Shown here piece after piece: positions 33,091 through 56,576 of a stretch of 64,000 nt of DNA (position 1 is its first letter; every line of letters begins with the position of its first letter). Where the stretch lies: positions 319,412-383,411 of the IMG/VR virus record IMGVR_UViG_3300042868_005134. One strand, given 5' to 3'. The translations under genes and the position numbers were made by a program. The notes under the pieces are model-generated. The model saw nothing but the letters and a program-made list of their open reading frames with translations. It made no database searches and was not told where the DNA came from.

Positions 33091-34191
33091 TTAAAAAGCA
33101 TCGTAGTAGTGGAAGTTCTTTTCTTTCACTTTGGTAAGTGTAAGAGCATGACCATCCTTGTTCATGAAGATAAACATGCCACTTTGTGGATCAATCTTTT
33201 GGATTTCAGCTGGCGTAAAACTAGCTTCTTCCCAGTTCCAATCTGCATCTTCCTTGTCGTCGTCTTTGTCAGTCCAGGGTAGGCCTGCGTTAGACACTTT
33301 GAACGACAAGTGGATCTTGCTTTGGAGTGGATTACCTTTCCATTCGCGAGACTCCAGATGCTTTTGTTCAACAGGAATACCTTTGAAGCTCAGTTGAGTT
33401 GAATACTTGTTGCCGTCATCAAATTCTGGTTTGGCATTCAACATCTTCAATGCTTCTTCAGGAGATTCATTGTAGCGATTCATTTCTTCAACTAATGCTT
33501 TCAGCATGTCAAAGTTGAACTGGTTAAACAACATGGCAATTGAGCAAATCTTAGCAATGTGTTCCTTGGCATTCAAGTTGTCCTCACAGTACTCGATGAT
33601 AAAGTCCTGTGTCAAGCCTGTGTAGTCCAGCATGTAGTAGATACGACCTGGACGATTACGCATGTGGCTATCCACACGCCACTTGTCGTTACAGGTAATC
33701 ACAAACATTTTCTTGCTGGGGAATACACCGTCCAACAAAGTCAGCATGGCTTCTTGCTCTTGTGCGTCGTAGACTTTTTCAAACTCGTCAAACAACACAA
33801 CACATGGTTGCTCGATAGCCTGAATCAAGGCATTGAACTTATCACCGGTCCACGCATTGTTAATAACAATGGTAGGATGGCCTTGATTGGCTGCATGAAT
33901 TGACAAGGCTTTTGCCAGCAAACTTTTGCCGCTACCTTTCTCACCAGTAAGCATTACGCCAGTGCTGGCACTACGATCCATGAATGTATTAAAAATACGA
34001 TTTGTATTTTTGTCTAAGTCGCCGTACCGCTTGCCTTTGATCTCAAACGAATCAATTTGTTCAAGATACAACTCACCACTCATTGGATTTTCTTTAATGG
34101 TAAAATTAGCCGCTGGTAGTGCCTCGTGTAGGTCCATGGCTTCTTTTGATGTTACACGAAACGAGATTCCTGATTTTAAAAAATATGACAT
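33091..34191 (-). CDS. AAA+ ATPase
   Basis: GEKGSGKS Walker A, VLFDEFEK Walker B and NRPGR arginine finger. Confidence 0.9.
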   Translation of the reverse strand: MSYFLKSGISFRVTSKEAMDLHEALPAANFTIKENPMSGELYLEQIDSFEIKGKRYGDLDKNTNRIFNTFMDRSASTGVMLTGEKGSGKSLLAKALSIHAANQGHPTIVINNAWTGDKFNALIQAIEQPCVVLFDEFEKVYDAQEQEAMLTLLDGVFPSKKMFVITCNDKWRVDSHMRNRPGRIYYMLDYTGLTQDFIIEYCEDNLNAKEHIAKICSIAMLFNQFNFDMLKALVEEMNRYNESPEEALKMLNAKPEFDDGNKYSTQLSFKGIPVEQKHLESREWKGNPLQSKIHLSFKVSNAGLPWTDKDDDKEDADWNWEEASFTPAEIQKIDPQSGMFIFMNKDGHALTLTKVKEKNFHYYDAF

Positions 34192-34324: not shown

Positions 34325-35740
34325 TTACAGCTTGTAACGATCACTCATTACAGTCTTAAGCATGATGCCTTCTGGAGTGAACTGATCCAAGTCAGCGGCT
34401 AGCAAGCTAGTCATTATACTTGGGCTGAATCCACTTACCAATGCGGCACCACTCTTGTCAGCCTTAACAGGCACGTTGTCTGAACTGTTTAGGTTCCAGA
34501 AAACAACTTGTGGCATGCTGTAGCCTGCGGCTTCGAACTTGCGTTCGATCATTTCCATTGCGCTGTCGTCGTGCTTGGCGCATTGGTCAAACTGCATGTC
34601 ACTCAAGATCAGCAACATGGCTGGCATGTCGCTGGCTGGTACTGAACCCTTAACCGCTACGTCTAGAATCTTGTTCATAGCCGCGTTTAGGTTAGTGCTC
34701 ATGTCCCAATCACTCTTGCTCATTTGAGCAACCTTGTCAACAATGTTACCCTTTAGAGTAACAAGTTCTGGCTTGCTAGAGAAAGTCAAGAAAGTGTCCT
34801 TGAACACACCCTTGTTCTTGTCTGCTAGGTACAGGCCCAAGCTGATTGAAACATCCATACAAGTCACATTAGTGTTCTTTCCTGCTGGGCAAGACATAGA
34901 ACCGCTAACGTCTACGATTGGCATGATGCTGGCATCTCCCACATAGTTTGGCAAAGCATCCCACTGTGCCACGATGTGGTCAGTGGCTGTCTTGTCCAAA
35001 ATTGCACGGTTGTAGCTTCCGATAACACCCTTCAACACGTCATGTGGGAAGATTGCGCTGGCGTTAACCTTGACAGTCTTGTCACCACTTACCAACTTGG
35101 CCACATACTCAGCGAATGCTGGTGTGTGACGGCTGAATGCCTTCTTGTAGTTGCGTGAAGCAACACTTGGCACGTGACTGAAGTTGATGTTGTCCCAGTC
35201 GTTGGCACACATTTGTGTTTCCACAACTGTGGTCATTCCCACTAAACTCTTACGATACTGCTTTGGAGTCATTCCAAAGAATGCTCGTACTTCAGCCGCA
35301 ATCTTGCCCTTACGAGGAGTCCACTTTGCGGCCAGACCGTTACGGGCACGTAGGGCATCGCCCAACATGGTATAAGCGGCTGACTTCAAGTCAGGGTTAG
35401 TGAAGACAAAGATGTCATCCCAACGGCCAACTTCAGGGATCTTGCGTAGCAAAGCCAAAGCGGCGTCTGGGTCACGCTTTTCTAGATGTACTAGAATGTC
35501 GCGGAACAATTGACGTTCACCTGCACCACCACGGACATCACGTGCCCATTGTGCGATGCGTAGTGCTACGTCACTGTTTTCTACATAAGCGGCAGTGAAG
35601 TCGCCTACAATGTTCTTACCACGGCTTGCGCCGATCTTGTAGAACAGGTCCACAGTGGCCTTGGCTGTGCTCTTACGTGCCTTCATGCCATTGGCAGTAC
35701 GGGCTTCTTGGTTTGCTATTGCTGTTACAAATGCGTTCAT
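34325..35740 (-). CDS. TROVE/Ro60-like protein with C-terminal vWA domain (DUF2828-like)
   Basis: ARDVRGGAGER, GRWDD and AAKWTPR in the helical region; MIDAS DVSGSM, T, SDMQFD; VFWNL and LVSGFS. Confidence 0.8.
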   Translation of the reverse strand: MNAFVTAIANQEARTANGMKARKSTAKATVDLFYKIGASRGKNIVGDFTAAYVENSDVALRIAQWARDVRGGAGERQLFRDILVHLEKRDPDAALALLRKIPEVGRWDDIFVFTNPDLKSAAYTMLGDALRARNGLAAKWTPRKGKIAAEVRAFFGMTPKQYRKSLVGMTTVVETQMCANDWDNINFSHVPSVASRNYKKAFSRHTPAFAEYVAKLVSGDKTVKVNASAIFPHDVLKGVIGSYNRAILDKTATDHIVAQWDALPNYVGDASIMPIVDVSGSMSCPAGKNTNVTCMDVSISLGLYLADKNKGVFKDTFLTFSSKPELVTLKGNIVDKVAQMSKSDWDMSTNLNAAMNKILDVAVKGSVPASDMPAMLLILSDMQFDQCAKHDDSAMEMIERKFEAAGYSMPQVVFWNLNSSDNVPVKADKSGAALVSGFSPSIMTSLLAADLDQFTPEGIMLKTVMSDRYKL

Positions 35741-35752
35741 TTTATTACCTCA

Positions 35753-35807
35753 CAGAATGTGTTTTTTTTCGATATGCGTGAAAATTTAAAGTTGCTGTTA
35801 ACATTCT
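35753..35807 (-). ncRNA. ACAGCAA-stem element 1, in the 5' UTR of the Ro60-like gene
   Basis: AGAATGT-TA-ACAGCAA...ACATTCTG immediately before the SD GAGG. Confidence 0.6.
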
Positions 35808-35817
35808 AAAACTTTAA

Positions 35818-36058
35818 CAGGATGATCGTGCCAATTTGTTTAGTATTCTGGTCTGACCAATTACGGCACTCAGACCCTATCAACATTCATGTTGACTATT
35901 CACACTCGGCTTTCTGTAGTGAACACATAGTATGTCTTTCCATACTGTCGTCTATTCCATCTGCGTACATGGTATTTCACATGTATAAACTTTTCAGTCC
36001 ACCCTTACGGGGCACATTCTATAGCATTAAGCGTTAGTTTAAATTGCTGTAGTCATCC
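35818..36058 (-). ncRNA. ACAGCAA-stem element 2 (Y RNA-like, about 240 nt)
   Basis: GGATGACTACAGCAA...TCATCCTG closing several hairpins. Confidence 0.65.
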
Positions 36059-36066
36059 AAATATAA

Positions 36067-36236
36067 CAGGATCGTTTTCTACTTTTTGTTTTTATCGAGG
36101 AGACTTATCGAAACTCCTCTATCTTCACTGTCCTTGCTTGCGCATTGTCTTTAACCTTCAAAGCCCCGAAAGGCTCCAGCTAATAACAGGGTAAGTGAAG
36201 CAATCCATAGTAATATGTAGTTGCTGTACCGATCCT
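36067..36236 (-). ncRNA. ACAGCAA-stem element 3 (Y RNA-like, about 170 nt)
   Basis: AGGATCGGTACAGCAA...CGATCCTG. Confidence 0.65.
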
Positions 36237-36273
36237 AAAACTGTCCACAAGCATTATTGCTTGCTATGTGACT

Positions 36274-36302
36274 ATTATAACAGTATTGCGCTGTCTTGTC
36301 AC
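36274..36302 (-). promoter_or_regulatory. Sigma70-type promoter for elements 3-2-1 and the Ro60-like gene
   Basis: GTGACA-17-TATAAT. Confidence 0.65.
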
Positions 36303-36333
36303 TACATTTTGGCTAAACTGCTAAAATATAAAT

Positions 36334-37079: not shown

Positions 37080-37196
37080 CAGGATAGGCTTTGCCTTATT
37101 TTTTATTTAAAACTTGACAAAGCGAACAAGTTCGTCCGGGTCGCCCCAGACCTTTGATACGGTTATTCACCGTTAGTGGTTTGCTGTCTCTATCCT
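37080..37196 (-). ncRNA. ACAGCAA-stem element 4
   Basis: AGGATAGAGACAGCAA...CTATCCTG. Confidence 0.65.
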
Positions 37197-37981: not shown

Positions 37982-37991
37982 ATATATACTA

Positions 37992-38100
37992 TGTAGCTGG
38001 GAGGCTTCGAACCTCCATGGAATCCTGGATTATATCCTGACCCGTCCCCTGACCTATGCTATGAGCATAGCGGGAGCTTTGCCTATTTGCTTACAGCTAC
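37992..38100 (-). ncRNA. tRNA-like RNA with expanded anticodon domain (CAT loop) and no encoded CCA
   Basis: GTAGCTG/CAGCTAC acceptor, D-arm, GGAGG-TTCGAAG-CCTCC T-arm; CCCG/CGGG stem bearing a CTATG-CTCATAG-CATAG hairpin. Confidence 0.6.
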
Positions 38101-38106
38101 ACAGTA

Positions 38107-38135
38107 ATTATACAATCTAGCTGTGAGTATGTCAA
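38107..38135 (-). promoter_or_regulatory. Consensus sigma70 promoter
   Basis: TTGACA-17-TATAAT. Confidence 0.85.
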
Positions 38136-38141
38136 GTGTTT

Positions 38142-38395: not shown

Positions 38396-38404
38396 ATAAA
38401 AATG

Positions 38405-38626
38405 AATTTGTTAAAGATGTTCCACCACATTATAGGAACCATTCACCCGAATTAACAAGCTCGAGCGGGATTCGGTAAGTTACTTGGAATACTTGTCCAG
38501 CTTGCAACCGATCTGCCCGCGGACACTACGTGCCCGGGTGGGAGTCGAACCCATTACCTTCTACTATATCAGTCCTTCGAAGAAACCTAGATAGCGTGAC
38601 TTTCTCTTGCTAACACTCTAACAAAA
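38405..38626 (-). ncRNA. Unassigned structured RNA of about 220 nt containing a T-arm-like hairpin
   Basis: Terminal stem TTTGTTAGAG/CTTTAACAAA; internal TGGG-TTCGACT-CCCA; several GC hairpins. Confidence 0.5.
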
Positions 38627-38628
38627 CT

Positions 38629-39849: not shown

Positions 39850-41268
39850 TTATTTTAAATTATATTCTAAATAATTCTTAAAAAATTCTTTATTTTTTTC
39901 AGCAAGTAACTTATAGTCTAGGTCTTGTTTGTTTGTATTCATTATTTCAGAAAACTCAAAACCCGCACTCGCATGTTCTCCCAAACGCCAAGACGTTGGC
40001 TTACCAATATGGTCCATTATAGAATTTAGTGACTTAGAAAATTCTGTTACTGTTTTTGCGTCCCAGTAATCGTTTTCCCAAAACTCTGTCTGTAATGGTT
40101 TCATAAATCTGTAACCGTACTGGCTATAGTTCTCATCAAACTTACTTTTGTAGGCCGAAGCTGGATCTCTAGATATCCCTAATGGATTAAATCTCCAATC
40201 ATACATTTCATTGTCCAAACACCACTGATGAGTAGCGTATAAATCTTCTCTAGTTTCACCAGTTAGCCCAGCAATAAAACTCAATTCAAATGTTATTTCG
40301 TCTTTCCATGTTTGCTTTAATGTTTGTAAAAATTCTTTTCCGTGTACGCCATTCCAACCTTTACCTACAATTTTACAAGCATCCTTATGAAAACTTTCAA
40401 TTCCAAAGTATGCGCTTTTGAGTCCTGAGTCTTTTAATTGCTGTATTGAACCTGGTCGAGATCCTATCAAATCTAATCGATTGTAGCCAATCCATTCTAA
40501 CTTAAATGGTAAATTTTGTACTATTTCAGTTATAGCTTCCATTTTTTCCTGACTCTCGTTAACTGTATCATCAATGAAAAAATATCTAGTTGTACCAAAC
40601 GTTTCGTAATTGTACATAAGTTCTTCCTTAACCAAGGAATAATCTCTTAGATAAGTATTTTTCTTTTTACCTAGATTAGGATATCTGCAAAATGAACAAG
40701 AAAACTGACAGCCCCGACCTAATTCAATTGGCAACACTTCGTACGATTGAACAAAGTCATCTTTCACAAAAGCAGGACTAAGTGTTTTAATATCAAAAGG
40801 TGTCCGCGTTAACGATACATTAGATTCCTGATCTAGAAATTTTAATAAATCATTCTCAGCATTTCCGTGCAGCTTAATCCAATCTAAATAGCAATTTTTT
40901 GCGTATGAATTAGAGCCTCCTAAAATCCATTTTAACTGAGGGAACTTATTTTCAAGTAGTGGCCTCGAGTTTAAAATCCATTCGGGTTCGCTCACTACCA
41001 TAGATAGTCTGCCAGTCGTTGTTGCTTTGCGTAATGCCCCGTCGTGCCAAAATGTAGAACTTACACCTATGCCTATAGTTGTAGAGTCTACAAATTTCGA
41101 AGTTACTTCAACTAATTCATTAGTAGTAAATTTCTGACAAAAGTCTATTACTTTAACAGTATAGCCATGTCTCCTTAACCATGCGGCTAATTGATACGGA
41201 CCCAGTGGTCTCGTATGTCCCGATTTATCTGGTAGATAAATCGAATTCCAAATTATAAAATGTGCCAT
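39850..41268 (-). CDS. Radical SAM protein with B12-binding-like N-terminal domain
   Basis: RPLGPYQLAAWLR N-terminus; ELGRGCQFSCSFC (CxxxCxxC), FIDDT, GIES and FIAGL.GET. Confidence 0.88.
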   Translation of the reverse strand: MAHFIIWNSIYLPDKSGHTRPLGPYQLAAWLRRHGYTVKVIDFCQKFTTNELVEVTSKFVDSTTIGIGVSSTFWHDGALRKATTTGRLSMVVSEPEWILNSRPLLENKFPQLKWILGGSNSYAKNCYLDWIKLHGNAENDLLKFLDQESNVSLTRTPFDIKTLSPAFVKDDFVQSYEVLPIELGRGCQFSCSFCRYPNLGKKKNTYLRDYSLVKEELMYNYETFGTTRYFFIDDTVNESQEKMEAITEIVQNLPFKLEWIGYNRLDLIGSRPGSIQQLKDSGLKSAYFGIESFHKDACKIVGKGWNGVHGKEFLQTLKQTWKDEITFELSFIAGLTGETREDLYATHQWCLDNEMYDWRFNPLGISRDPASAYKSKFDENYSQYGYRFMKPLQTEFWENDYWDAKTVTEFSKSLNSIMDHIGKPTSWRLGEHASAGFEFSEIMNTNKQDLDYKLLAEKNKEFFKNYLEYNLK

Positions 41269-41301
41269 GAGATATTTATTGTACTATCGATCTCATGAAA
41301 A

Positions 41302-41967
41302 TTAACTAATATGTAGGACAGGAATAGTTACTTTCGGTTTTGCTGGATATTTTAAATCTGGTTTTGTATGATGAATCCGTCTGTTTCTATTAATATCTTT
41401 ATAACCAACTCCTAAAATTATCATAGGCTGTCCCTGGATATTTAACACTGTCTGAAGACCGGCTATATCAAAGCATCCGCAATAACCTGTTGAGTATCCT
41501 AATTGATGTGCTAATAGATTCAAGTATCCACTAGCTATACCTATGGACATGTGAATGTCGATTAACATACGTTTCTTTGCCGTATCCGACACTAAGCCTG
41601 CTGGATGTCTAAACTCTTCAAAGTACGTATTCAAATACGGCCTGTCTGAATTAGCTGTAAGTATATCTGCTAGTGTTAACTGTTCGAATACTACTAACAT
41701 GTTTGCCAATGTTTGTGAATTATTTTCTATGCTCATTGAGGGTGGAAAATCGAAACCACTTGTATTGTTGTAAACTTGTTCTATTACAGTCCGATTAGTA
41801 ATAAAATGGCATCGATAAAATGCAGCATTTTGTTTACTGGGGCATTGGGTTACTGCTTCAACTAATAAGTCGATATCTTCTTGCGGAATTGATCGTGTTA
41901 AATCCCAATTTCGTTGGCAATGTTGACTTTTTTGAATAGTAATTTTTACTGCTGATTTATCGATCAT
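41302..41967 (-). CDS. Nitroreductase-family protein
   Basis: QRNWD...IP.E...CPSKQN...LGYSTG.CGC...LGVG. Confidence 0.75.
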   Translation of the reverse strand: MIDKSAVKITIQKSQHCQRNWDLTRSIPQEDIDLLVEAVTQCPSKQNAAFYRCHFITNRTVIEQVYNNTSGFDFPPSMSIENNSQTLANMLVVFEQLTLADILTANSDRPYLNTYFEEFRHPAGLVSDTAKKRMLIDIHMSIGIASGYLNLLAHQLGYSTGYCGCFDIAGLQTVLNIQGQPMIILGVGYKDINRNRRIHHTKPDLKYPAKPKVTIPVLHIS

Positions 41968-42234: not shown

Positions 42235-42244
42235 ACAAATAAAA

Positions 42245-42363
42245 CAGGATACGTTTTTTACGAAGGGCATGGAGCCCTTTGCTCAACCGCTGAGCGAATC
42301 TGCCATAAGGCAAATGTTGGAATCGAACCAACGTGTCATAAATGACTTTGCTGTGCGTATCCT
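42245..42363 (-). ncRNA. ACAGCAA-stem element 5: YrlA-like RNA carrying a circularly permuted tRNA cloverleaf
   Basis: AGGATACGCACAGCAA...CGTATCCTG enclosing, in order, a T-arm, a loop-closed acceptor stem, a D-arm and an anticodon arm (CTCCATG). Confidence 0.8.
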
Positions 42364-42368
42364 TAACT

Positions 42369-42488
42369 TGGTGTCGTTGCTGGGATTCGAACCCAGATCT
42401 CTTCCTTTAGAGTGGAATTTTGATTGTGCTGACTGTATCCTTAACAGGATAACCTTTTATAAGCGTCCTACCATTAGACGACAACGAC
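42369..42488 (-). ncRNA. CCA-ending tRNA-like RNA with a permuted ACAGCAA-type stem in place of the anticodon arm (element 6)
   Basis: GTCGTTG/CAACGAC-ACCA acceptor, D and T arms; insert TATCCTG-TTA-AGGATACAGTCAGCA. Confidence 0.75.
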
Positions 42489-42493
42489 ATGAC

Positions 42494-42570
42494 TGGTACC
42501 CCTAGGCAGATTCGAACCGCCATCCAGCAGATTTTAAGTCTACCCGCACTACCAATTAGCGTACAGGGGC
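42494..42570 (-). tRNA. tRNA-Leu(TAA), short variable loop
   Basis: 77 nt, CCA. Confidence 0.85.
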
Positions 42571-42582
42571 ATAAATATTTTT

Positions 42583-42747
42583 GTGAAAACTTACGATCAC
42601 TTAACACCGCAAGGATTACAGTTTCACCTTTGTTTGTACCAAGGTGTGTGCTGTGTTATGGTACACGATATATACGACAACACCTACTTCGAATTACAAT
42701 ACTTCACTGACGTTAACAAAGCACTTCGCTTTGTCAACAATTTATAA
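42583..42747 (+). CDS. Possible small protein antisense to the tRNA array (54 aa)
   Basis: GTG-start ORF filling the gap between two tRNA-Leu genes, preceded by ATAAATA. Confidence 0.35.
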   Translation: MKTYDHLTPQGLQFHLCLYQGVCCVMVHDIYDNTYFELQYFTDVNKALRFVNNL

Positions 42748-42824
42748 TGGTACCCCTTGTCTGATTCGAACAGACAGCCAACTCCTTTTGAGAGAATCCG
42801 CACTACCAATTAGCGTAAAGGGGC
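42748..42824 (-). tRNA. tRNA-Leu(CAA), short variable loop
   Basis: 77 nt, CCA. Confidence 0.85.
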
Positions 42825-42827
42825 ATA

Positions 42828-42904
42828 TGGTACCTTCGGGCGGGTTCGAACCCCCAACCAACAGTTTCTAAAACTATCCGCACTCCCAATTAGCGTACGA
42901 AGGC
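42828..42904 (-). tRNA. tRNA-Leu(TAG), short variable loop
   Basis: 77 nt, CCA. Confidence 0.83.
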
Positions 42905-42915
42905 ATTTAAATTTT

Positions 42916-42990
42916 TGGTAGTCGATGCTGGGTTCGAACCAGCGACCTACACGATGTCAACGTGGTGCTCTACCACTGAGCTAATCGACT
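42916..42990 (-). tRNA. tRNA-Val(GAC)
   Basis: Cloverleaf, CCA. Confidence 0.93.
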
Positions 42991-42991
42991 A

Positions 42992-43066
42992 TGGTACCCT
43001 TGGACAGTTTCGAAATGTCGACCCTCGCCTTATCAAGACGATGCTCTTCCTCTGAGCTACAAGGGC
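42992..43066 (-). tRNA. tRNA-Ile(GAT)
   Basis: Cloverleaf, CCA. Confidence 0.88.
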
Positions 43067-43080
43067 ATAAACTACTTAGG

Positions 43081-43151
43081 GGTGACTATCGGGGCTCGAA
43101 CCCGAACTACCAGAGTCACAGTCTAGGTTGCTACCATTACAACATAGCCAC
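43081..43151 (-). tRNA. tRNA-His(GTG), no encoded CCA or G-1
   Basis: GTGGCTA/TAGTCAC-C73 and CTGTGAC loop; flanked by a 10-bp extension stem. Confidence 0.85.
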
Positions 43152-43163
43152 ACCTAAATAGTC

Positions 43164-43237
43164 TGGTCCTCTCGACAAGAATCGAACTTGTAATGGCCGG
43201 TTATCAGCCGACTGTTATACCATTTAACTACAAGAGG
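43164..43237 (-). tRNA. tRNA-Ile(GAT)
   Basis: Cloverleaf, CCA. Confidence 0.9.
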
Positions 43238-43245
43238 AATAAAAA

Positions 43246-43307
43246 CAGGATAGCATTTTTTGGCTTTTTTTACAGAAAAGATTTTTTTGATTTGCTGTTG
43301 CTATCCT
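43246..43307 (-). ncRNA. ACAGCAA-stem element 7 displaying a Tyr-type anticodon stem-loop
   Basis: AGGATAGCAACAGCAA...TGCTATCCTG with CTTTT-CTGTAAA-AAAAG. Confidence 0.7.
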
Positions 43308-43401: not shown

Positions 43402-43406
43402 ATATA

Positions 43407-43562
43407 GGTTTTCCCGGCGACCAACTATCTTTCTTAAGGACTCGCTGGCTTGTCTCGTGTGAAAGAGTTTATACAGACCTTGTACAATTCTACTGGCGTG
43501 TCATGCTCAAGAAATAGGGCACTAGAATACAAGGGACTCATCTCAACGTCTAGCTGGGAAAC
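43407..43562 (-). ncRNA. Unassigned rod-like RNA with a possible pseudoknot
   Basis: TTTCCCAGC/GCCGGGAAA and CCTTGTA..TTCTA/TAGAA..TACAAGG stems; loop TTCTTGAG complementary to CTTAAGAA. Confidence 0.5.
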
Positions 43563-43563
43563 T

Positions 43564-43655
43564 TGGCGGAAGACGGAGGAGTCGAACCCCATCCCATTTC
43601 TGAGAACCCAGTTTTCAAGGCTGGTCGGCGCACCAACGCACCTGCATCATCTTCC
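43564..43655 (-). tRNA. tRNA-Ser(TGA) with 8/4 fold and Sec-like D-arm
   Basis: GGAAGATG/CGTCTTCC 8-bp acceptor, 4-bp T-stem, 6-bp D-stem with 4-nt loop, G73, CCA. Confidence 0.75.
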
Positions 43656-43661
43656 ATAACT

Positions 43662-43991: not shown

Positions 43992-44066
43992 TGGTAGGGG
44001 CACAGGGAATCGAACCCTGATAGACCGGTTAAAAGCCGGATATTCTAGCCGTTGAATTATACCCCC
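43992..44066 (-). tRNA. tRNA-Lys(TTT)
   Basis: Cloverleaf, CTTTTAA loop, CCA. Confidence 0.9.
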
Positions 44067-44377: not shown

Positions 44378-44433
44378 CAGGATGCTTATTTTTCAATTAA
44401 AAGTTGAATTTTTGAATTTGCTGTTCGCATCCT
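44378..44433 (-). ncRNA. ACAGCAA-stem element 8 displaying a Lys(UUU)-type anticodon stem-loop
   Basis: AGGATGCGAACAGCAA...GCATCCTG with TTCAA-CTTTTAA-TTGAA. Confidence 0.7.
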
Positions 44434-44909: not shown

Positions 44910-44913
44910 ATGT

Positions 44914-44988
44914 TGGTATCGCGTACGGGGATCGAACCCGCCTGAGTAAGTTGAAAGCCTACGGACCTCACCAGAAGTCAAACGCGAT
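44914..44988 (-). tRNA. tRNA-Glu(TTC)
   Basis: Cloverleaf, CCA. Confidence 0.85.
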
Positions 44989-44997
44989 GTAATAAAA

Positions 44998-45055
44998 CAG
45001 GATAGCATCTTTTTTCCATTAAAAGTGAAATTAGAATTTTTGCTGTTGCTATCCT
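44998..45055 (-). ncRNA. ACAGCAA-stem element 9 displaying a Lys(UUU)-type anticodon stem-loop
   Basis: AGGATAGCAACAGCAA...TGCTATCCTG with TTTCA-CTTTTAA-TGGAA. Confidence 0.7.
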
Positions 45056-45060
45056 AAAAT

Positions 45061-45148
45061 TGGTGGAGGCTGATGGAATCGAACCACTTGACAGCCACCC
45101 TGCTTAATATGTCTACCGGGTTACAGCCGGCAACAGGGAACAACCTCC
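45061..45148 (-). tRNA. D-armless tRNA-Tyr(GTA)-like RNA
   Basis: 8-bp acceptor, GCCGG-CTGTAAC-CCGGT arm, T-arm and CCA; D-arm replaced by TTCCCTGTT. Confidence 0.65.
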
Positions 45149-56064: not shown

Positions 56065-56137
56065 GTTTTTATTTCCTTTAAAAATGTCTGTTTGACATAT
56101 AGCTAGTATATAGCAGATCTAGAAGTGCGGCCAAAGA

Positions 56138-56496
56138 AAATGGCGCCAAAGGCGCCATTTACTGGTTGTTTATTTTACAAGGTAAGTCCTACCCCGGAGT
56201 TGCAGTTTCTTAGGCTGCTAGTTCAAAACGCTCGTCGTTTAAGGCGACGTGTGTTTCAAAGTACTCGAATGTATTTGCGTTTGCATTTACGGATTTTGCT
56301 TGATTTAGAGTCATCGCCTACTCAGTTGCCGTCTCTATTATCTCACCCTGTCGAAACCATGGCAGGCCCATCATAAAAACACAATACCAAAGTAAATTTA
56401 CACGGAATACCAAAGTAAATTTATGCTTTTATGGTGGACCTGGCGGGAGTCGAACCCGCGTCCAGAATGCCTTCACTTTGAAGGAATTACAACTAT
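56138..56496 (-). ncRNA. ssrA: Permuted two-piece tmRNA
   Basis: Acceptor piece (GCGGGTTCGACTCCCGCCAGGTCCACCA, ending 56432) precedes the coding piece (GGGCCTG...GGTTTCGAC, from 56369). G3:U70 pair; tag ANANTFEYFETHVALNDERFELAA at 56284-56210; terminator at 56138-56160. Confidence 0.9.
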
Positions 56497-56502
56497 ACGC
56501 TT

Positions 56503-56531
56503 ATTATAGCGCATTGTATTTAGTGTGTCAA
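56503..56531 (-). promoter_or_regulatory. Consensus sigma70 promoter of the tmRNA
   Basis: TTGACA-17-TATAAT. Confidence 0.85.
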
Positions 56532-56576
56532 TTAGTTTGGCAAACAATAAATACAACGAAAGAGCCGGGAGCGAAT

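What the first reader, a model, noticed from the sequence alone, without database searches (positions are those of the whole stretch)
42369..42488. CCA-ending tRNA with the Ro-type handle grafted, in permuted order, into the anticodon position
Seen: a perfect acceptor (GTCGTTG/CAACGAC-A-CCA) with D- and T-arms. The anticodon arm is replaced by about 65 nt containing the 3' half of the family stem (TATCCTG), a 3-nt link, then the 5' half (AGGATACAGTCAGCA), plus a hairpin TTCC-ACTCTAAA-GGAA whose loop includes CT-CTA-AA (amber-anticodon-like, imperfect geometry). It is the topological mirror of the neighbouring element at 42245. Inference: a potentially chargeable tRNA-Y RNA chimera, or an evolutionary intermediate between tRNA and YrlA.
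Basis: partly seen in the sequence, partly recalled or inferred. Interest (0 to 1): 0.76.

Follow-up and report, generated by a model that had tools for sequence, protein, structure and literature searches.

The report
tRNA carrying a Ro-protein handle
This jumbo-phage gene encodes a complete, CCA-ending tRNA-shaped RNA with an extra arm inserted in its anticodon stem: the same hairpin that marks the phage's Y-RNA-like RNAs next to a Ro60-like protein gene. It belongs to a widespread family that genome annotators have dismissed as "pseudo-tRNAs", and it is the unpermuted counterpart of bacterial YrlA RNAs.

Summary
The anticodon arm is not replaced. The RNA is a full cloverleaf with a 45-nt cassette (42417-42461) inserted between positions 28 and 29. 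The cassette is an A-rich linker, a closed handle hairpin, CAGCA and an AU-rich linker.

Comparative evidence is strong:
- About 50 distinct homologues in IMG/VR, with 97.8-98.6% of cells paired and 19-23 of 27 pairs showing double changes.
- The split anticodon stem pairs in 100% of sequences.
- Deleting the cassette in silico makes ARAGORN, 51 as tRNAs; 0/51 are called with it in place.

The handle matches that of about 190 open, Y-RNA-like elements in the same tRNA arrays. The nearby DUF2828/DUF7788 protein has the Ro60 fold (Z 21.6). It is present in all 9 chimera-bearing records that are at least 50% complete.

Positions 34-36 are unconstrained, 11 of 50 loops have 8 nt (the window's included), and no member has a regular CUA loop. 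The RNA is therefore probably not a decoder, and the amber-suppressor idea lacks support.

Members also occur in cultured phages (KVP40 "tRNA-Pseudo-3/4", Synechococcus phage BUCT-ZZ01). Most likely role: a Ro-like-protein adaptor or decoy built on a tRNA body. No binding, charging or RNA-end data exist.

The parts
42369..42488 (-). The whole 120-nt tRNA-handle RNA. RNA nucleotide n corresponds to window position 42488-(n-1).
   Evidence: Covariance model R1 scores 124.8 bits, and this is the only copy in the 383-kb genome.
42482..42488 (-). Acceptor stem 5' strand, GUCGUUG. It pairs with 42373-42379.
   Evidence: All 7 pairs are 100% paired and all show double changes across the family.
42465..42479 (-). 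D arm GUCU-AAUGGUA-GGAC, preceded by U8 at 42481.
   Evidence: The stem covaries. U8 and A14 are invariant and GG is present in the loop.
42462..42463 (-). tRNA positions 27-28 (CU): the first two base pairs of the anticodon stem, pairing with AG at 42401-42402.
   Evidence: Helix 3 is 100% paired, with pair types CG/UA/AU and UA/GC/CG/UG.
42417..42461 (-). The 45-nt insert between tRNA positions 28 and 29: A-rich linker, handle hairpin, CAGUCAGCA, AU-rich linker.
   Evidence: Deleting it in silico makes ARAGORN, 51 members as 74-77-nt tRNAs; 0/51 are called with it in place.
42436..42451 (-). Closed handle hairpin UAUCCU-GUUA-AGGAUA. The 3' half of the family stem comes first and the 5' half second.
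   Evidence: Invariant among close relatives. In cultured-phage copies the stem covaries: AUCCU/AGGAU, AUUCU/AGAAU, AUACU/AGUAU. The loop is always G-N-N-A.
42427..42435 (-). Single-stranded CAGUCAGCA. The CAGCA motif lies exactly 5 nt after AGGAU.
   Evidence: The AGGAU-N5-CAGCA spacing holds in 49/50 chimeras and in all open elements. A distant locus with a different stem keeps the motif as GGACAGCAA.
42401..42416 (-). Remainder of the anticodon arm: UCC (positions 29-31), the 8-nt loop ACUCUAAA (42406-42413), and GGA-AG (positions 39-43).
   Evidence: Across the family the loop is A/C32, U33, NNN, A37, A38. It has 7 nt in 39 members and 8 nt in 11.
42380..42400 (-). Variable loop AGAU (42397-42400) and T arm CUGGG-UUCGAAU-CCCAG (42380-42396).
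   Evidence: The T stem covaries and the T loop is canonical.
42369..42379 (-). Acceptor 3' strand CAACGAC, discriminator A, and encoded CCA.
   Evidence: CCA is encoded in 45/50 members, and in 37/38 canonical tRNAs of the array.
42246..42363 (-). Neighbouring YrlA-type open-handle RNA, starting 5 nt after the CCA. Module order: handle 5' half, CAGCAA, small hairpin, T arm, closed 7-bp 'acceptor', UC, D arm, hairpin, A-rich tract, handle 3' half.
   Evidence: Folding gives -45.2 kcal/mol with z -5.5. It parses as a permuted tRNA, as do 19 other elements.
34325..35740 (-). Gene for a 471-aa Ro60-fold protein (Pfam DUF2828 + DUF7788; PHROG 850 'RNA-binding protein').
   Evidence: The AlphaFold2 model has pLDDT 91. 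Foldseek's top six hits are all Ro60/Rsr/TROVE. VIA-align gives Z 21.6 to 1yvp, against at most 9.8 for vWA-only hits. The MIDAS-type D277-x-S279-x-S281 is invariant.
35753..36236 (-). Three tandem open-handle RNAs directly upstream of the Ro-like gene: about 36236-36067, 36059-35818 and 35807-35753. The last has an AGAAU/AUUCU stem.
   Evidence: Sequence of the 35741-36333 gap. They lie on the same strand as the gene and end 12 nt before its start codon.
43247..43307 (-). Short open-handle RNA.
44379..44433 (-). Short open-handle RNA whose cargo is a 5-bp hairpin with loop CUUUUAA, the same loop as in the phage's tRNA-Lys(UUU).
44999..45055 (-). Short open-handle RNA whose cargo is a hairpin with loop CUUUUAA.
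37081..37196 (-). 116-nt open-handle RNA with a different cargo.

Best explanation
The locus encodes a stable, tRNA-shaped non-coding RNA that serves as a carrier for a protein-binding handle. It is effectively a non-permuted YrlA-type Y RNA.

Shown:
- It folds as a complete cloverleaf: 7-bp acceptor, D arm, 5-bp anticodon stem with loop, 4-nt variable loop, T arm, N73 and CCA.
- A 45-nt cassette is inserted between positions 28 and 29.
- The cassette carries the same handle (helix AUCCU/AGGAU, a fixed 5-nt spacer, single-stranded CAGCA, and an A-rich tract on the other strand) that defines a large family of Y-RNA-like elements in the same tRNA arrays.
- A Ro60-fold protein is encoded on the same strand, directly behind three such elements.
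- The chimera never occurs without that gene in near-complete genomes.

Inferred:
- The RNA is transcribed as part of the tRNA array and trimmed like a tRNA, by RNase P at the 5' end, leaving the encoded CCA at the 3' end.
- The Ro-like protein docks on the handle, as Ro60 docks on the Y RNA stem.
- The tRNA body engages a tRNA-recognising factor, so the RNA tethers or gates the Ro-like protein towards tRNA metabolism.

Its anticodon triplet is free to drift, so it most likely does not decode. Its sister RNAs present only an anticodon stem-loop, or only the tRNA elbow, on the same handle. The system therefore looks like a kit that displays tRNA parts on one protein.
For: Structure:
- 97.8% of cells paired on a MAFFT alignment of 30 sequences, with 19/27 pairs showing double changes and a covariation score of 0.564 against 0.157 for shuffles (0/500).
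- 98.6% paired and 23/27 pairs with double changes once cultured-phage copies are added.
- The split anticodon stem is 100% paired in both alignments.
- With the insert deleted, ARAGORN as tRNAs; with it present, 0/51.
- Ordinary tRNAs match the model end to end at no more than 53 bits; family members score 67-138 bits.

Handle identity: the AGGAU-N5-CAGCA spacing holds in 49/50 chimeras and in 193 open elements.

Protein: Ro60 fold with Z 21.6, and Thermus phage Ro60 at Z 15-17.

Linkage:
- All 9 chimera-bearing records at least 50% complete carry the gene, at protein identities of 47-93%.
- Three handle RNAs abut the gene's start codon.
- A locus whose protein is 42% identical has four handle RNAs upstream, with changed stems but the CAGCAA motif retained.
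- In BUCT-ZZ01 two chimeras lie directly after the gene.

Not a decoder:
- Entropy of 1.4-1.8 bits at positions 34-36, against 0-0.3 bits at positions 33, 37 and 38.
- 11/50 loops have 8 nt.
- In all 12 loci with at least 29 tRNAs, a canonical tRNA has the same anticodon.

Presence in RNA libraries with the insert intact, and no joint across it.

Precedent: YrlA is a tRNA mimic bound by Rsr, and M. smegmatis YrlA is cut by RNase P and gains CCA (PMC4201824; bioRxiv 10.1101/312249).
Against: - No binding, processing or expression experiment exists. The RNA-library evidence comes from assembled contigs that may derive from DNA.
- The handle does not match the canonical Rsr motif GNCGAAN0-1G; it has ACAGCAA instead.
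- The protein is not a Pfam TROVE member.
- The chimera is dispensable. A 96%-complete relative with the gene lacks it, and strains lacking the 1-kb block that holds it are common.
- The effector that would read the tRNA body is unknown.
- U33, A37 and A38 are strongly retained, and 7-nt loops are the majority. That could mean the loop is read by something.
Confidence: 0.55

Rival explanations
1. Decoy or sponge for tRNA-targeting host defences. The handle RNAs would display anticodon stem-loops or whole tRNA bodies to soak up or mislead anticodon nucleases, and the Ro-like protein would stabilise or organise them. This overlaps with the best explanation but makes the nuclease the target.
For: - Half of the short open-handle RNAs (32/64, against 0.7 expected) carry a 5-bp hairpin with a 7-nt loop. 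The commonest loop, CUUUUAA, is identical to the loop of the phage's own tRNA-Lys(UUU).
- The chimera triplet changes quickly between near-identical bodies, for example GUC versus UCU.
- tRNA-Lys and other tRNAs are known targets of PARIS, PrrC-type and retron effectors, and phage tRNAs are known countermeasures (PMC11464382, PMC10264068, PMC11555353).
- A distant relative's Ro-like gene sits near two T4-type RNA ligase genes.
Against: - The triplets are as variable as the plain linkers, which fits drift as well as an arms race.
- The anticodon stem UCC/GGA does not copy that of the matching canonical tRNAs.
- No nuclease partner is known for the freshwater hosts, and nothing has been tested.
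Confidence: 0.15
2. Intron-like insert. The 45-nt cassette is cut out and the halves are ligated, producing an ordinary 75-nt tRNA. The handle is then the recognition element for the processing machinery.
For: - Removing the insert leaves a textbook cloverleaf in 45/51 members.
- The nucleotides at the two insert boundaries can slide, for example U on both sides in the window copy.
- The YrlA literature raised the possibility of processing towards canonical tRNAs (bioRxiv 10.1101/312249).
Against: - No joint skipping the insert appears in four metatranscriptomes, while insert-containing contigs are present.
- The insert is the most conserved part of the RNA, and the same handle exists on about 190 RNAs that are not inside tRNAs.
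- 22% of the products would have 8-nt loops, and the products would duplicate canonical tRNAs.
- The same body carries different anticodons, which conflicts with synthetase identity rules.
- The genome has no RtcB or Rnl2-type ligase. The Rnl1 search was uninformative.
- I saw no bulge-helix-bulge complementarity around the junctions (by inspection), and 45 nt is too short for a group I intron.
Confidence: 0.08
3. A working, chargeable tRNA that decodes with the insert in place, for example a specialised elongator, a frameshift or amber suppressor, or a mis-sense tRNA.
For: - Intact acceptor, N73 and CCA, and the tRNA core markers.
- The window loop can be read as U-CUA-AA with one extra base.
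- TAG ends only 1 of 45 long open frames in the window.
- One subgroup has GGGGCCU/GGGCUCC + A73, that is G3:U70, the AlaRS identity element also used by tmRNA, combined with non-Ala triplets.
Against: - No CUA occurs in any regular loop, and the nearest relative with the same body has GUC.
- The triplet is unconstrained and redundant with canonical tRNAs.
- A bulky insert, possibly protein-bound, on the anticodon stem should hinder entry to the ribosome (inference from known ribosome-tRNA contacts).
- Standard-code ORFs, including the Ro-like gene, align end to end with homologues.
Confidence: 0.07
4. The handle is not a Ro-like-protein site. It would be an RNA-processing, termination or DNA-recombination signal of the tRNA array, and its presence inside a tRNA would be a by-product of array shuffling.
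For: - Both breakpoints of a 1-kb presence/absence block, seen in all four runs, lie at the 3' halves of handle elements.
- Open handles end in AUCCUG followed by a U run.
- The chimera is patchily distributed.
Against: - RNA-level compensatory changes occur in the handle stem, and the single-stranded CAGCA keeps a fixed spacing across proteins only 42-48% identical.
- The closed form has no free ends and no U tail, yet keeps the motif.
- Co-occurrence and same-strand adjacency with the Ro-fold gene.
- The terminator scan does not call the handles.
Confidence: 0.1
5. A decayed pseudo-tRNA with no function, as GenBank labels its relatives.
For: - tRNA finders reject it.
- RefSeq calls the KVP40 and Ahp1 copies tRNA-Pseudo.
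- The window copy has an aberrant 8-nt loop.
Against: - The fold is conserved through compensatory substitutions across about 50 lineages, and across phage families whose Ro-like proteins have diverged to 42% identity.
- The insert is invariant where the stems vary.
Confidence: 0.02

Closest known systems
YrlA-type bacterial Y RNAs (Salmonella Typhimurium YrlA, PDB 6cu1; M. smegmatis YrlA)
   Same: - A Ro-protein-binding module joined to a domain with tRNA-like D and T arms, an acceptor stem and the tRNA tertiary-core nucleotides.
- Encoded on the same strand as the Ro gene.
- M. smegmatis YrlA even gains an open acceptor end with CCA after RNase P cleavage (PMC4201824; bioRxiv 10.1101/312249).
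- The neighbour at 42246-42363 has the YrlA module order.
   Different: - YrlA is circularly permuted relative to tRNA: its ends lie in the Ro stem, its acceptor is closed, it has no encoded CCA and it has no anticodon loop.
- Here the ends lie in the acceptor with encoded CCA, the Ro-type stem is closed by a G-N-N-A loop, and a full anticodon stem-loop is retained beside it.
- The motif is ACAGCAA, not GNCGAAN0-1G.
- The partner protein is DUF2828-type, not Pfam TROVE.
- No Rfam family matches.
Phage Ro60 homologues with Y-like RNAs (mycobacteriophages, CcrColossus, Bacillus phage G; Thermus phage phiLo Ro60 with Yrl1/Yrl2, PDB 9kop/9l5y)
   Same: - A phage-encoded Ro60-fold protein (HEAT ring + vWA) with small RNAs encoded next to it (PMC12135203, PMC4201824).
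- The model of the window's protein aligns to phiLo Ro60 at Z 15-17.
   Different: - Those RNAs are ordinary stem-bulge-stem Y RNAs with a CGAA motif.
- None is described as a complete tRNA carrying the handle.
- Here the RNAs sit inside a tRNA array of about 40 genes.
Circularly permuted tRNA genes (Cyanidioschyzon merolae and others) and the 'dimeric tRNA' model for the origin of YrlA
   Same: tRNA and YrlA-type architectures are related by circular permutation (discussed in bioRxiv 10.1101/312249). The window holds both topologies 5 nt apart, and also a permuted two-piece tmRNA.
   Different: - Permuted tRNA genes are processed back into normal tRNAs.
- Here both topologies carry the protein handle, and nothing suggests interconversion at the RNA level.
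tRNA mimics with a free CCA end (tmRNA tRNA-like domain, plant-virus tRNA-like structures)
   Same: tRNA-shaped RNAs with an aminoacylatable-looking end and an additional functional domain. One subgroup of the family has G3:U70 + A73, as tmRNA does.
   Different: Those mimics lack a standard cloverleaf with all four arms. Here the cloverleaf is complete and the extra domain is a small protein handle.
tRNA introns and long variable arms (archaeal non-canonical introns; class II tRNAs)
   Same: Extra nucleotides within the tRNA body that leave the L-shape intact. ARAGORN accepts the RNA once the insert is removed.
   Different: - The position (28/29, in the 5' strand of the anticodon stem) is not a known bacterial or phage intron site.
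- No bulge-helix-bulge motif or ribozyme features are evident.
- The insert is more conserved than the exons.
- No spliced form was seen.
'tRNA-Pseudo' / tRNA-OTHER annotations in T4-like phages (KVP40 tRNA-Pseudo-3/4/5; Aeromonas phage Ahp1)
   Same: These are the same RNA family. R1 scores 56-84 bits on the KVP40 copies and 67 bits on Ahp1. T4-like genome papers list such 'pseudogenes' only as counts (PMC1524935).
   Different: They were never interpreted. The conserved insert, its identity with the Y-like handle, and the link to the Ro-related 'RNA-binding protein' gene downstream of the array are not annotated.

Membership tests
tRNA (Rfam RF00005 / functional tRNA) | Cloverleaf: 7-bp acceptor, D arm, 5-bp anticodon stem, variable loop, T arm, N73-CCA | tested here: met
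   All helices are supported by covariation, including the split anticodon stem. CCA is encoded.
tRNA (Rfam RF00005 / functional tRNA) | Recognised by tRNA detectors at family thresholds | tested here: not met
   ARAGORN and Rfam give no call at 42369-42488, even at E up to 5. After in-silico removal of the insert ARAGORN, 51 members as tRNAs, the window copy only as 'tRNA-???'.
tRNA (Rfam RF00005 / functional tRNA) | 7-nt anticodon loop with a constrained anticodon matched to identity elements | tested here: not met
   The window loop has 8 nt. Across the family, positions 34-36 have 1.4-1.8 bits of entropy, the same bodies carry different triplets, and 11/50 loops have 8 nt.
tRNA (Rfam RF00005 / functional tRNA) | Aminoacylation and decoding on the ribosome | not testable with these tools
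   This needs acid gels, in-vitro charging and ribosome association assays.
Y RNA / YrlA | Ro-binding stem formed by pairing of the RNA's own 5' and 3' ends | tested here: not met
   In the chimera the stem is a closed internal hairpin and the RNA ends lie in the acceptor stem. The feature is met by the neighbour and by about 190 open elements.
Y RNA / YrlA | GNCGAAN0-1G (or GGUCCGA-like) motif on the 5' strand (PMC4201824) | tested here: not met
   The motif here is A-CAGCA-A, 5 nt after AGGAU. It occupies an analogous position but has a different sequence.
Y RNA / YrlA | tRNA-like domain with conserved D/T arms and tertiary-core nucleotides | tested here: met
   U8, A14, GG in the D loop, UUCGA(A/U)U, and a covarying Levitt pair.
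Y RNA / YrlA | Encoded near (within 4 kb in PMC4201824) and on the same strand as a Ro60 orthologue | tested here: inconclusive
   The strand is the same. The chimera lies 6.6 kb from the gene, but three open-handle RNAs abut the gene. In BUCT-ZZ01 the chimeras lie less than 300 nt from it. Co-occurrence is 9/9 in near-complete records.
Y RNA / YrlA | Physically bound by the Ro protein | not testable with these tools
   This needs RIP, EMSA or cryo-EM.
Ro60 / Rsr (TROVE) proteins, for the partner gene 34325-35740 | HEAT-repeat ring plus C-terminal vWA domain | tested here: met
   Foldseek's top six hits are all Ro60/Rsr/TROVE. VIA-align gives Z 21.6 over 413 residues to 1yvp, against at most 9.8 for vWA-only hits.
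Ro60 / Rsr (TROVE) proteins, for the partner gene 34325-35740 | Match to Pfam TROVE (PF05731) | tested here: not met
   Pfam gives DUF2828 + DUF7788 only. There is no TROVE match anywhere in the genome, and phmmer finds no PDB match by sequence.
Ro60 / Rsr (TROVE) proteins, for the partner gene 34325-35740 | MIDAS-type DxSxS motif in the vWA domain | tested here: met
   D277, S279 and S281 are invariant in 69 diverse homologues.
tRNA intron (archaeal BHB type or group I) | Bulge-helix-bulge at the junctions, or a group I ribozyme core; a spliced product | tested here: not met
   The flanks are A-rich and AU-rich without complementarity (by inspection). At 45 nt the insert is too short for a group I intron. 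No joint was seen in RNA-library contigs. The genome has no RtcB or Rnl2-type ligase.

The most novel reading that the evidence does not exclude
The handle RNAs form a modular, phage-encoded 'tRNA display' system. One Ro60-like protein would be loaded with interchangeable tRNA parts: an anticodon stem-loop alone, the elbow alone (YrlA-type), or a whole CCA-ending tRNA (this finding). The fast-changing anticodon-like triplets would programme which host factor, tRNA or codon the particle engages. That could work either as decoys for tRNA-cleaving defences or as a guide that brings the Ro-like protein to particular tRNAs or ribosomes. On the evolutionary side, the whole-tRNA form would be the ancestral state, and permuted YrlA RNAs would arise from it by tandem duplication.
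Probability: 0.15. Interest if true: 0.9.

Novelty: new variant of a known kind. Interest (0 to 1): 0.78.

Why it matters
- **A missing topology.** Y RNAs of the YrlA type have been described as 'circularly permuted tRNAs' lacking a CCA end and an anticodon loop, and their origin from tRNA and their effector are open questions. This family has normal tRNA connectivity, CCA and an anticodon loop, with the Ro-type handle as an add-on arm. It sits next to permuted relatives in the same arrays, so the origin question can now be tested by phylogeny.
- **Experimental systems.** Members occur in cultured phages (KVP40, Synechococcus phage BUCT-ZZ01 on S. elongatus PCC 7942, Aeromonas phage Ahp1). That opens direct tests of Ro-RNA function.
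- **Re-labelling.** A recurrent class of phage 'pseudo-tRNAs' turns out to be conserved structured RNAs. The very large DUF2828/DUF7788 family (693 cultured phage records and thousands of metagenomic clusters) is tied to the Ro60 fold and to tRNA arrays.
- **Possible anti-defence role.** If the decoy or adaptor idea holds, this adds a new RNA-based layer to the conflict over tRNAs between phages and bacteria.

Tried and rejected
- **Rfam.** Searches at gathering and permissive thresholds found no family for the chimera or its neighbour.
- **Megablast of the region against cultured phages.** No match.
- **phmmer of the protein against PDB sequences.** No match. The fold search was needed instead.
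- **Literature search on DUF2828.** Only incidental plant and tardigrade mentions.
- **Amber suppressor.** Rejected: there is no CUA in any regular loop, and the window loop is an 8-nt outlier.
- **Gap-filling tRNA.** Rejected: canonical tRNAs with the same anticodon are present in every well-sampled array.
- **Recent derivation from a particular canonical tRNA.** Not supported: the best identities are only 0.65-0.72, spread over Val, Asn, Glu, Thr and Arg tRNAs.
- **Recent derivation of the neighbouring YrlA-type RNA from this chimera.** Not supported: their D and T arms differ.
- **My first regex surveys of open handles.** One was too strict and one was mistyped. One search corrected them.
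- **Covariation of positions 27-28 in the permuted elements.** Inconclusive because the automatic parsing was poor.
- **Look-ups of distant protein relatives.** They mostly returned short contigs. Only L163 was clearly informative. L164/L165 (T4-like) show no upstream handle.
- **Rnl1 family search.** Uninformative because its controls did not ring.
- **Promoter and terminator scan.** At shuffle level, so it gives no transcription-unit boundaries.
- **Two papers could not be read.** The KVP40 genome paper and the Sim/Wolin 2020 review are not held.
Full report
**Setting.** The window is the last 64 kb of a 383,411-bp IMG/VR viral record judged complete, so this is a jumbo phage. Lake and freshwater metatranscriptomes hold closely related sequence. 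The minus strand between 36.3 and 44.9 kb carries 38 ARAGORN tRNA genes, 37 of them with encoded CCA. A permuted two-piece tmRNA lies at 56.1-56.5 kb. The finding lies in this array, 5 nt after tRNA-Leu(UAA) and 5 nt before a second unusual RNA.

**Checking the observation.** Read on the minus strand, 42488 to 42369 gives a 120-nt RNA. It has a perfect 7-bp acceptor stem, discriminator A and CCA. It has a D arm (GUCU/GGAC, loop AAUGGUA) and a T arm (CUGGG/CCCAG, loop UUCGAAU). Between them lie UAUCCU-GUUA-AGGAUA, then CAGUCAGCA, then UUCC-ACUCUAAA-GGAA. ARAGORN and Rfam do not call the element, even at E up to 5. Folding the single sequence is only mildly better than shuffles (z -2.5), so the case rests on comparison.

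**A handle family.** The motif AGGAU-N5-CAGCA, with a complementary ...AUCCUG further downstream, recurs on the minus strand throughout the array. These 'open' elements pair their own 5' and 3' ends, and the stem positions next to AGGAU covary between copies. Three of them stand in tandem directly upstream of the gene at 34325-35740. The last ends 12 nt before the start codon and has an AGAAU/AUUCU stem. In the finding the two halves come in the opposite order (3' half, four-base loop, 5' half), which makes a closed hairpin inside the tRNA.

**The family of the finding.** I scanned IMG/VR for the closed junction (ATCCTG-NN-AAGGAT-N5-CAGCA). The scan gave 79 stretches, and about 50 distinct sequences share the whole architecture.
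- A MAFFT alignment of 30 sequences shows 97.8% of cells paired. Of 27 pairs, 19 change on both sides. The covariation score is 0.564 against 0.157 in shuffles (0 of 500 reach it) and at most 0.124 when partners are slid.
- A covariance model separates the family (67-138 bits) from ordinary tRNAs (at most 53 bits). The ordinary tRNAs match the model end to end with the insert skipped.
- The genome has exactly one copy.

**Re-parsing the structure.** The two bases that follow the D stem and position 26 (CU, CG, UU or AC) covary perfectly with the two bases that follow the small hairpin (AG, CG, AA or GU). This helix is paired in 30/30 and 31/31 sequences, with three and four pair types at its two positions. 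Together with the UCC/GGA pairs it forms a normal 5-bp anticodon stem. That stem is followed by a 4-5-nt variable loop of the usual kind (AGAU, AGGU) and then the T arm.

The RNA is therefore a complete cloverleaf into which 36-54 nt (45 nt here, 42417-42461) are inserted between positions 28 and 29. When that segment is removed in silico, ARAGORN of 51 members as 74-77-nt tRNAs. With the insert present it calls none. The tRNA core markers are all kept:
- U8 and A14 in 50/50;
- GG in the D loop;
- a canonical T loop;
- the Levitt pair A15:U48 switching to G15:C48;
- CCA in 45/50.

**The anticodon-like loop.** In the 39 members with 7-nt loops, position 32 is A or C, U33 is present in 37, A37 in 38 and A38 in 39. 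Positions 34-36 are close to random (1.4-1.8 bits), with 14 different triplets. Eleven members, the window's among them, have 8-nt loops.
- Nearly identical bodies carry different triplets. Examples are GUC versus UCU, and the window's ACUCUAAA versus AUGUCAA in L127.
- No member has CUA in a regular loop.
- In all twelve loci with at least 29 tRNAs, a canonical tRNA with the same anticodon is present.
- The acceptor stem and discriminator vary freely (A 33, G 13, C 3, U 1).

These facts argue against a decoding role and against the amber-suppressor idea. They leave open whether the loop is read by something else. One subgroup has GGGGCCU/GGGCUCC + A, that is G3:U70 with A73, the AlaRS identity element, combined with non-Ala triplets. 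That keeps anticodon-independent charging conceivable.

**The partner protein.** The 471-aa product of 34325-35740 matches Pfam DUF2828 + DUF7788 and PHROG 850 'RNA-binding protein', not TROVE. The genome has no TROVE match.
- An AlphaFold2 model built on 69 diverse homologues is confident (pLDDT 91, pTM 0.90).
- Foldseek's six best PDB matches are all Ro60/Rsr/TROVE over the full length.
- VIA-align gives Z 21.6 to the Xenopus Ro-RNA complex 1yvp (413 residues aligned), 20.2 to human Ro60, 15-17 to Thermus phage phiLo Ro60 and 13.6 to Deinococcus Rsr. The next class, isolated vWA domains, stays at or below 9.8.
- The MIDAS-type DxSxS is invariant.

The family is very large: 6,211 representatives at 50% clustering and 693 cultured phage records, one of them annotated 'putative Ro sixty-related protein'.

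**Linking RNA and protein.**
- All nine chimera-bearing viral records estimated at least 50% complete encode the protein, at 47-93% identity. The 22 records without it are all estimated under 40% complete, most of them small fragments.
- Open handles occur only on the protein's strand in 80 protein-anchored loci (27 against 0).
- A metagenomic contig whose protein is only 42% identical has two tRNAs and four tandem handle RNAs directly upstream of the gene. Their stems are different (AGAUUAC/GUAAUCU, AAACUAC/GUAGUUU), but the single-stranded GGACAGCAA/AGACAGCAA is kept. One of them is a YrlA-type element whose D arm and linker are almost the same sequence as in chimeras such as L095.
- In KVP40 and Aeromonas phage Ahp1 the gene follows the tRNA array on the same strand.
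- In Synechococcus phage BUCT-ZZ01 two chimeras lie immediately after the gene.

The converse does not hold. A 96%-complete relative with a 91%-identical protein has no chimera.

**Cultured phages and earlier annotation.** The model finds family members in three cultured phages:
- KVP40, at 84, 81, 79.5 and 56 bits;
- BUCT-ZZ01, at 101 and 75 bits;
- Ahp1, at 67 bits.

RefSeq labels the KVP40 copies tRNA-Pseudo-3 and -4 ('tRNA-OTHER') and the Ahp1 copy 'tRNA-Pseudo'. T4-like genome papers only count such 'pseudogenes' (PMC1524935).

These deeper relatives supply compensatory changes in the handle stem itself: AUCCU/AGGAU, AUUCU/AGAAU, AUACU/AGUAU and AAUCA/UGAUU. The N5-C(A/U/G)GCA spacing is kept. 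With them, 23 of 27 pairs show double changes and 98.6% of cells pair. That alignment is fitted to the model, but the MAFFT-only result agrees. KVP40 tRNA-Pseudo-5 shows a second design, in which the handle sits at the tip of the anticodon stem in place of the loop.

**Modularity of the open elements.**
- Twenty open elements parse strictly as handle 5' half, CAGCAA, small hairpin, T arm, closed 7-8-bp acceptor, U-N, D arm, A-rich tract, handle 3' half. That is the YrlA order and the circular permutation of the finding. The window's neighbour at 42246-42363 is one of them (z -5.5).
- Of 64 short elements (up to 70 nt), 32 carry a 5-bp hairpin with a 7-nt Y-U-NNN-R-A loop, against 0.7 expected from shuffles. 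The commonest loop is CUUUUAA, identical to the loop of the phage's own tRNA-Lys(UUU).
- In at least eight lineages the chimera is followed 5-6 nt after CCA by an open element.

The same handle is thus attached to an anticodon stem-loop, to a tRNA elbow, or to a whole tRNA.

**Expression and processing.** Only assembled contigs of metatranscriptomes were available. In the best run they cover the chimera with the insert intact (bin depths 24, 56 and 102). They include the GUUA-to-GUCA loop variant and the AUGUCAA loop of relatives. No joint removes the insert. This is weak evidence, because RNA libraries can contain DNA and contigs hide rare forms.

All four runs show a joint from 42238 to 43242. 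Strains lacking the 1-kb block that holds the chimera therefore exist, and both breakpoints sit at the 3' halves of handle elements. The genome lacks RtcB, an Rnl2-type ligase and a CCA-adding enzyme.

**Interpretation.** The best-supported reading is a non-permuted YrlA-type RNA: a tRNA body, processed and stabilised like a tRNA, carrying a docking site for the phage's Ro60-like protein. By analogy with Y RNAs, which tether Ro60 to effectors and gate its cavity (PMC4201824; bioRxiv 10.1101/312249; PMC12135203), it would couple that protein to a tRNA-recognising factor.

The steps from 'handle' to 'bound by the protein', and from 'tRNA body' to 'effector', are inferred. A decoy role against tRNA-cleaving defences is an attractive variant. 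It fits the anticodon-loop cargoes and the known conflicts over tRNA-Lys and other tRNAs (PMC11464382, PMC10264068, PMC11555353). The other rivals are less likely, for the reasons listed with each: an intron, a working suppressor tRNA, a processing or recombination signal, and a dead pseudogene.

[quoted passage not shown] I found no description of the following in the searchable literature or in Rfam:
- a complete tRNA cloverleaf with encoded CCA and a retained anticodon loop, carrying the handle as an insert at 28/29;
- its modular relatives;
- the link of 'pseudo-tRNAs' and tRNA arrays to the DUF2828-type Ro-fold protein.

I rate this a new variant of a known kind. It bears directly on the proposed tRNA origin of Y RNAs, because both topologies with the same handle coexist in one array.

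Noticed in passing
window 56135-56545 (-): A circularly permuted (two-piece) tmRNA gene in a phage genome. Rfam tmRNA_permuted scores 140 bits and beta_tmRNA 134 bits; ARAGORN calls a permuted tmRNA with a 24-residue tag. The phage therefore carries permuted tRNA-like genes of two unrelated kinds.
   Followed up: no
window 42238 / 43242: All four metatranscriptome runs contain a form that joins 42238 to 43242 and so lacks 1,003 bp: the YrlA-type RNA, the chimera and seven tRNAs. Both breakpoints lie at the 3' half (..AUCCUGUUUU) of a handle element. This suggests that handle repeats mediate block shuffling in the tRNA array.
   Followed up: partly
window 44379-44433 and 44999-45055 (-); many loci: Short open-handle RNAs whose only cargo is a 5-bp hairpin with loop CUUUUAA, identical to the anticodon loop of the phage's tRNA-Lys(UUU) at 43992-44066. 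32 of 64 short elements have such anticodon-stem-loop-like hairpins, against 0.7 expected.
   Followed up: partly
L175:2602-2714 (-) = KVP40 NC_005083 181101-181213, 'tRNA-Pseudo-5': A different design in a cultured phage. The tRNA body has a 5-bp anticodon stem (CCGGC/GCCGG), and its loop is replaced by the handle (AGUCUG-AU-AAGAUU-N5-CUGCA). Model R1 does not detect it.
   Followed up: partly
window 33091-34191 (-): An AAA+ ATPase gene (PHROG 2376) lies immediately downstream of the Ro-like, vWA-containing gene. AAA+/vWA pairs of the MoxR type are known chaperone pairs in jumbo phages (PMC7824862). I did not test whether this adjacency is conserved.
   Followed up: no
window 39850-41967 (-): A radical SAM gene (472 aa) and a nitroreductase-family gene (221 aa) are embedded in the middle of the tRNA array. 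They may be RNA-modification enzymes. Neither has a PHROG match.
   Followed up: no
window 43402-43661, 38396-38628, 37982-38141, 44910-45130 (-): Further gaps in the array contain T-arm-like GGTTCGA motifs and acceptor-like ends that ARAGORN does not call. One example is an RNA of about 95 nt with GGAAGAU...GUCUUCC-G-CCA at the 5' end of the 43402-43661 gap. These may be more unconventional tRNA-like RNAs.
   Followed up: no
window 42571-42747 (-): A 177-nt non-tRNA spacer between two tRNA-Leu genes folds into several hairpins (-46.9 kcal/mol). It has no handle and no Rfam match, and its nature is unknown.
   Followed up: no
whole window: TAG ends only 1 of 45 open frames of at least 200 codons (TAA 33, TGA 11). 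This may simply reflect base composition. I saw no sign of recoding in the genes examined.
   Followed up: no
L166:8979-12551: In a distant relative (protein about 41% identical), the Ro-like gene lies 2-5 kb upstream of a T4 Rnl1-type RNA ligase gene and a second RNA ligase gene. This is an RNA-repair neighbourhood that the window's phage lacks.
   Followed up: no
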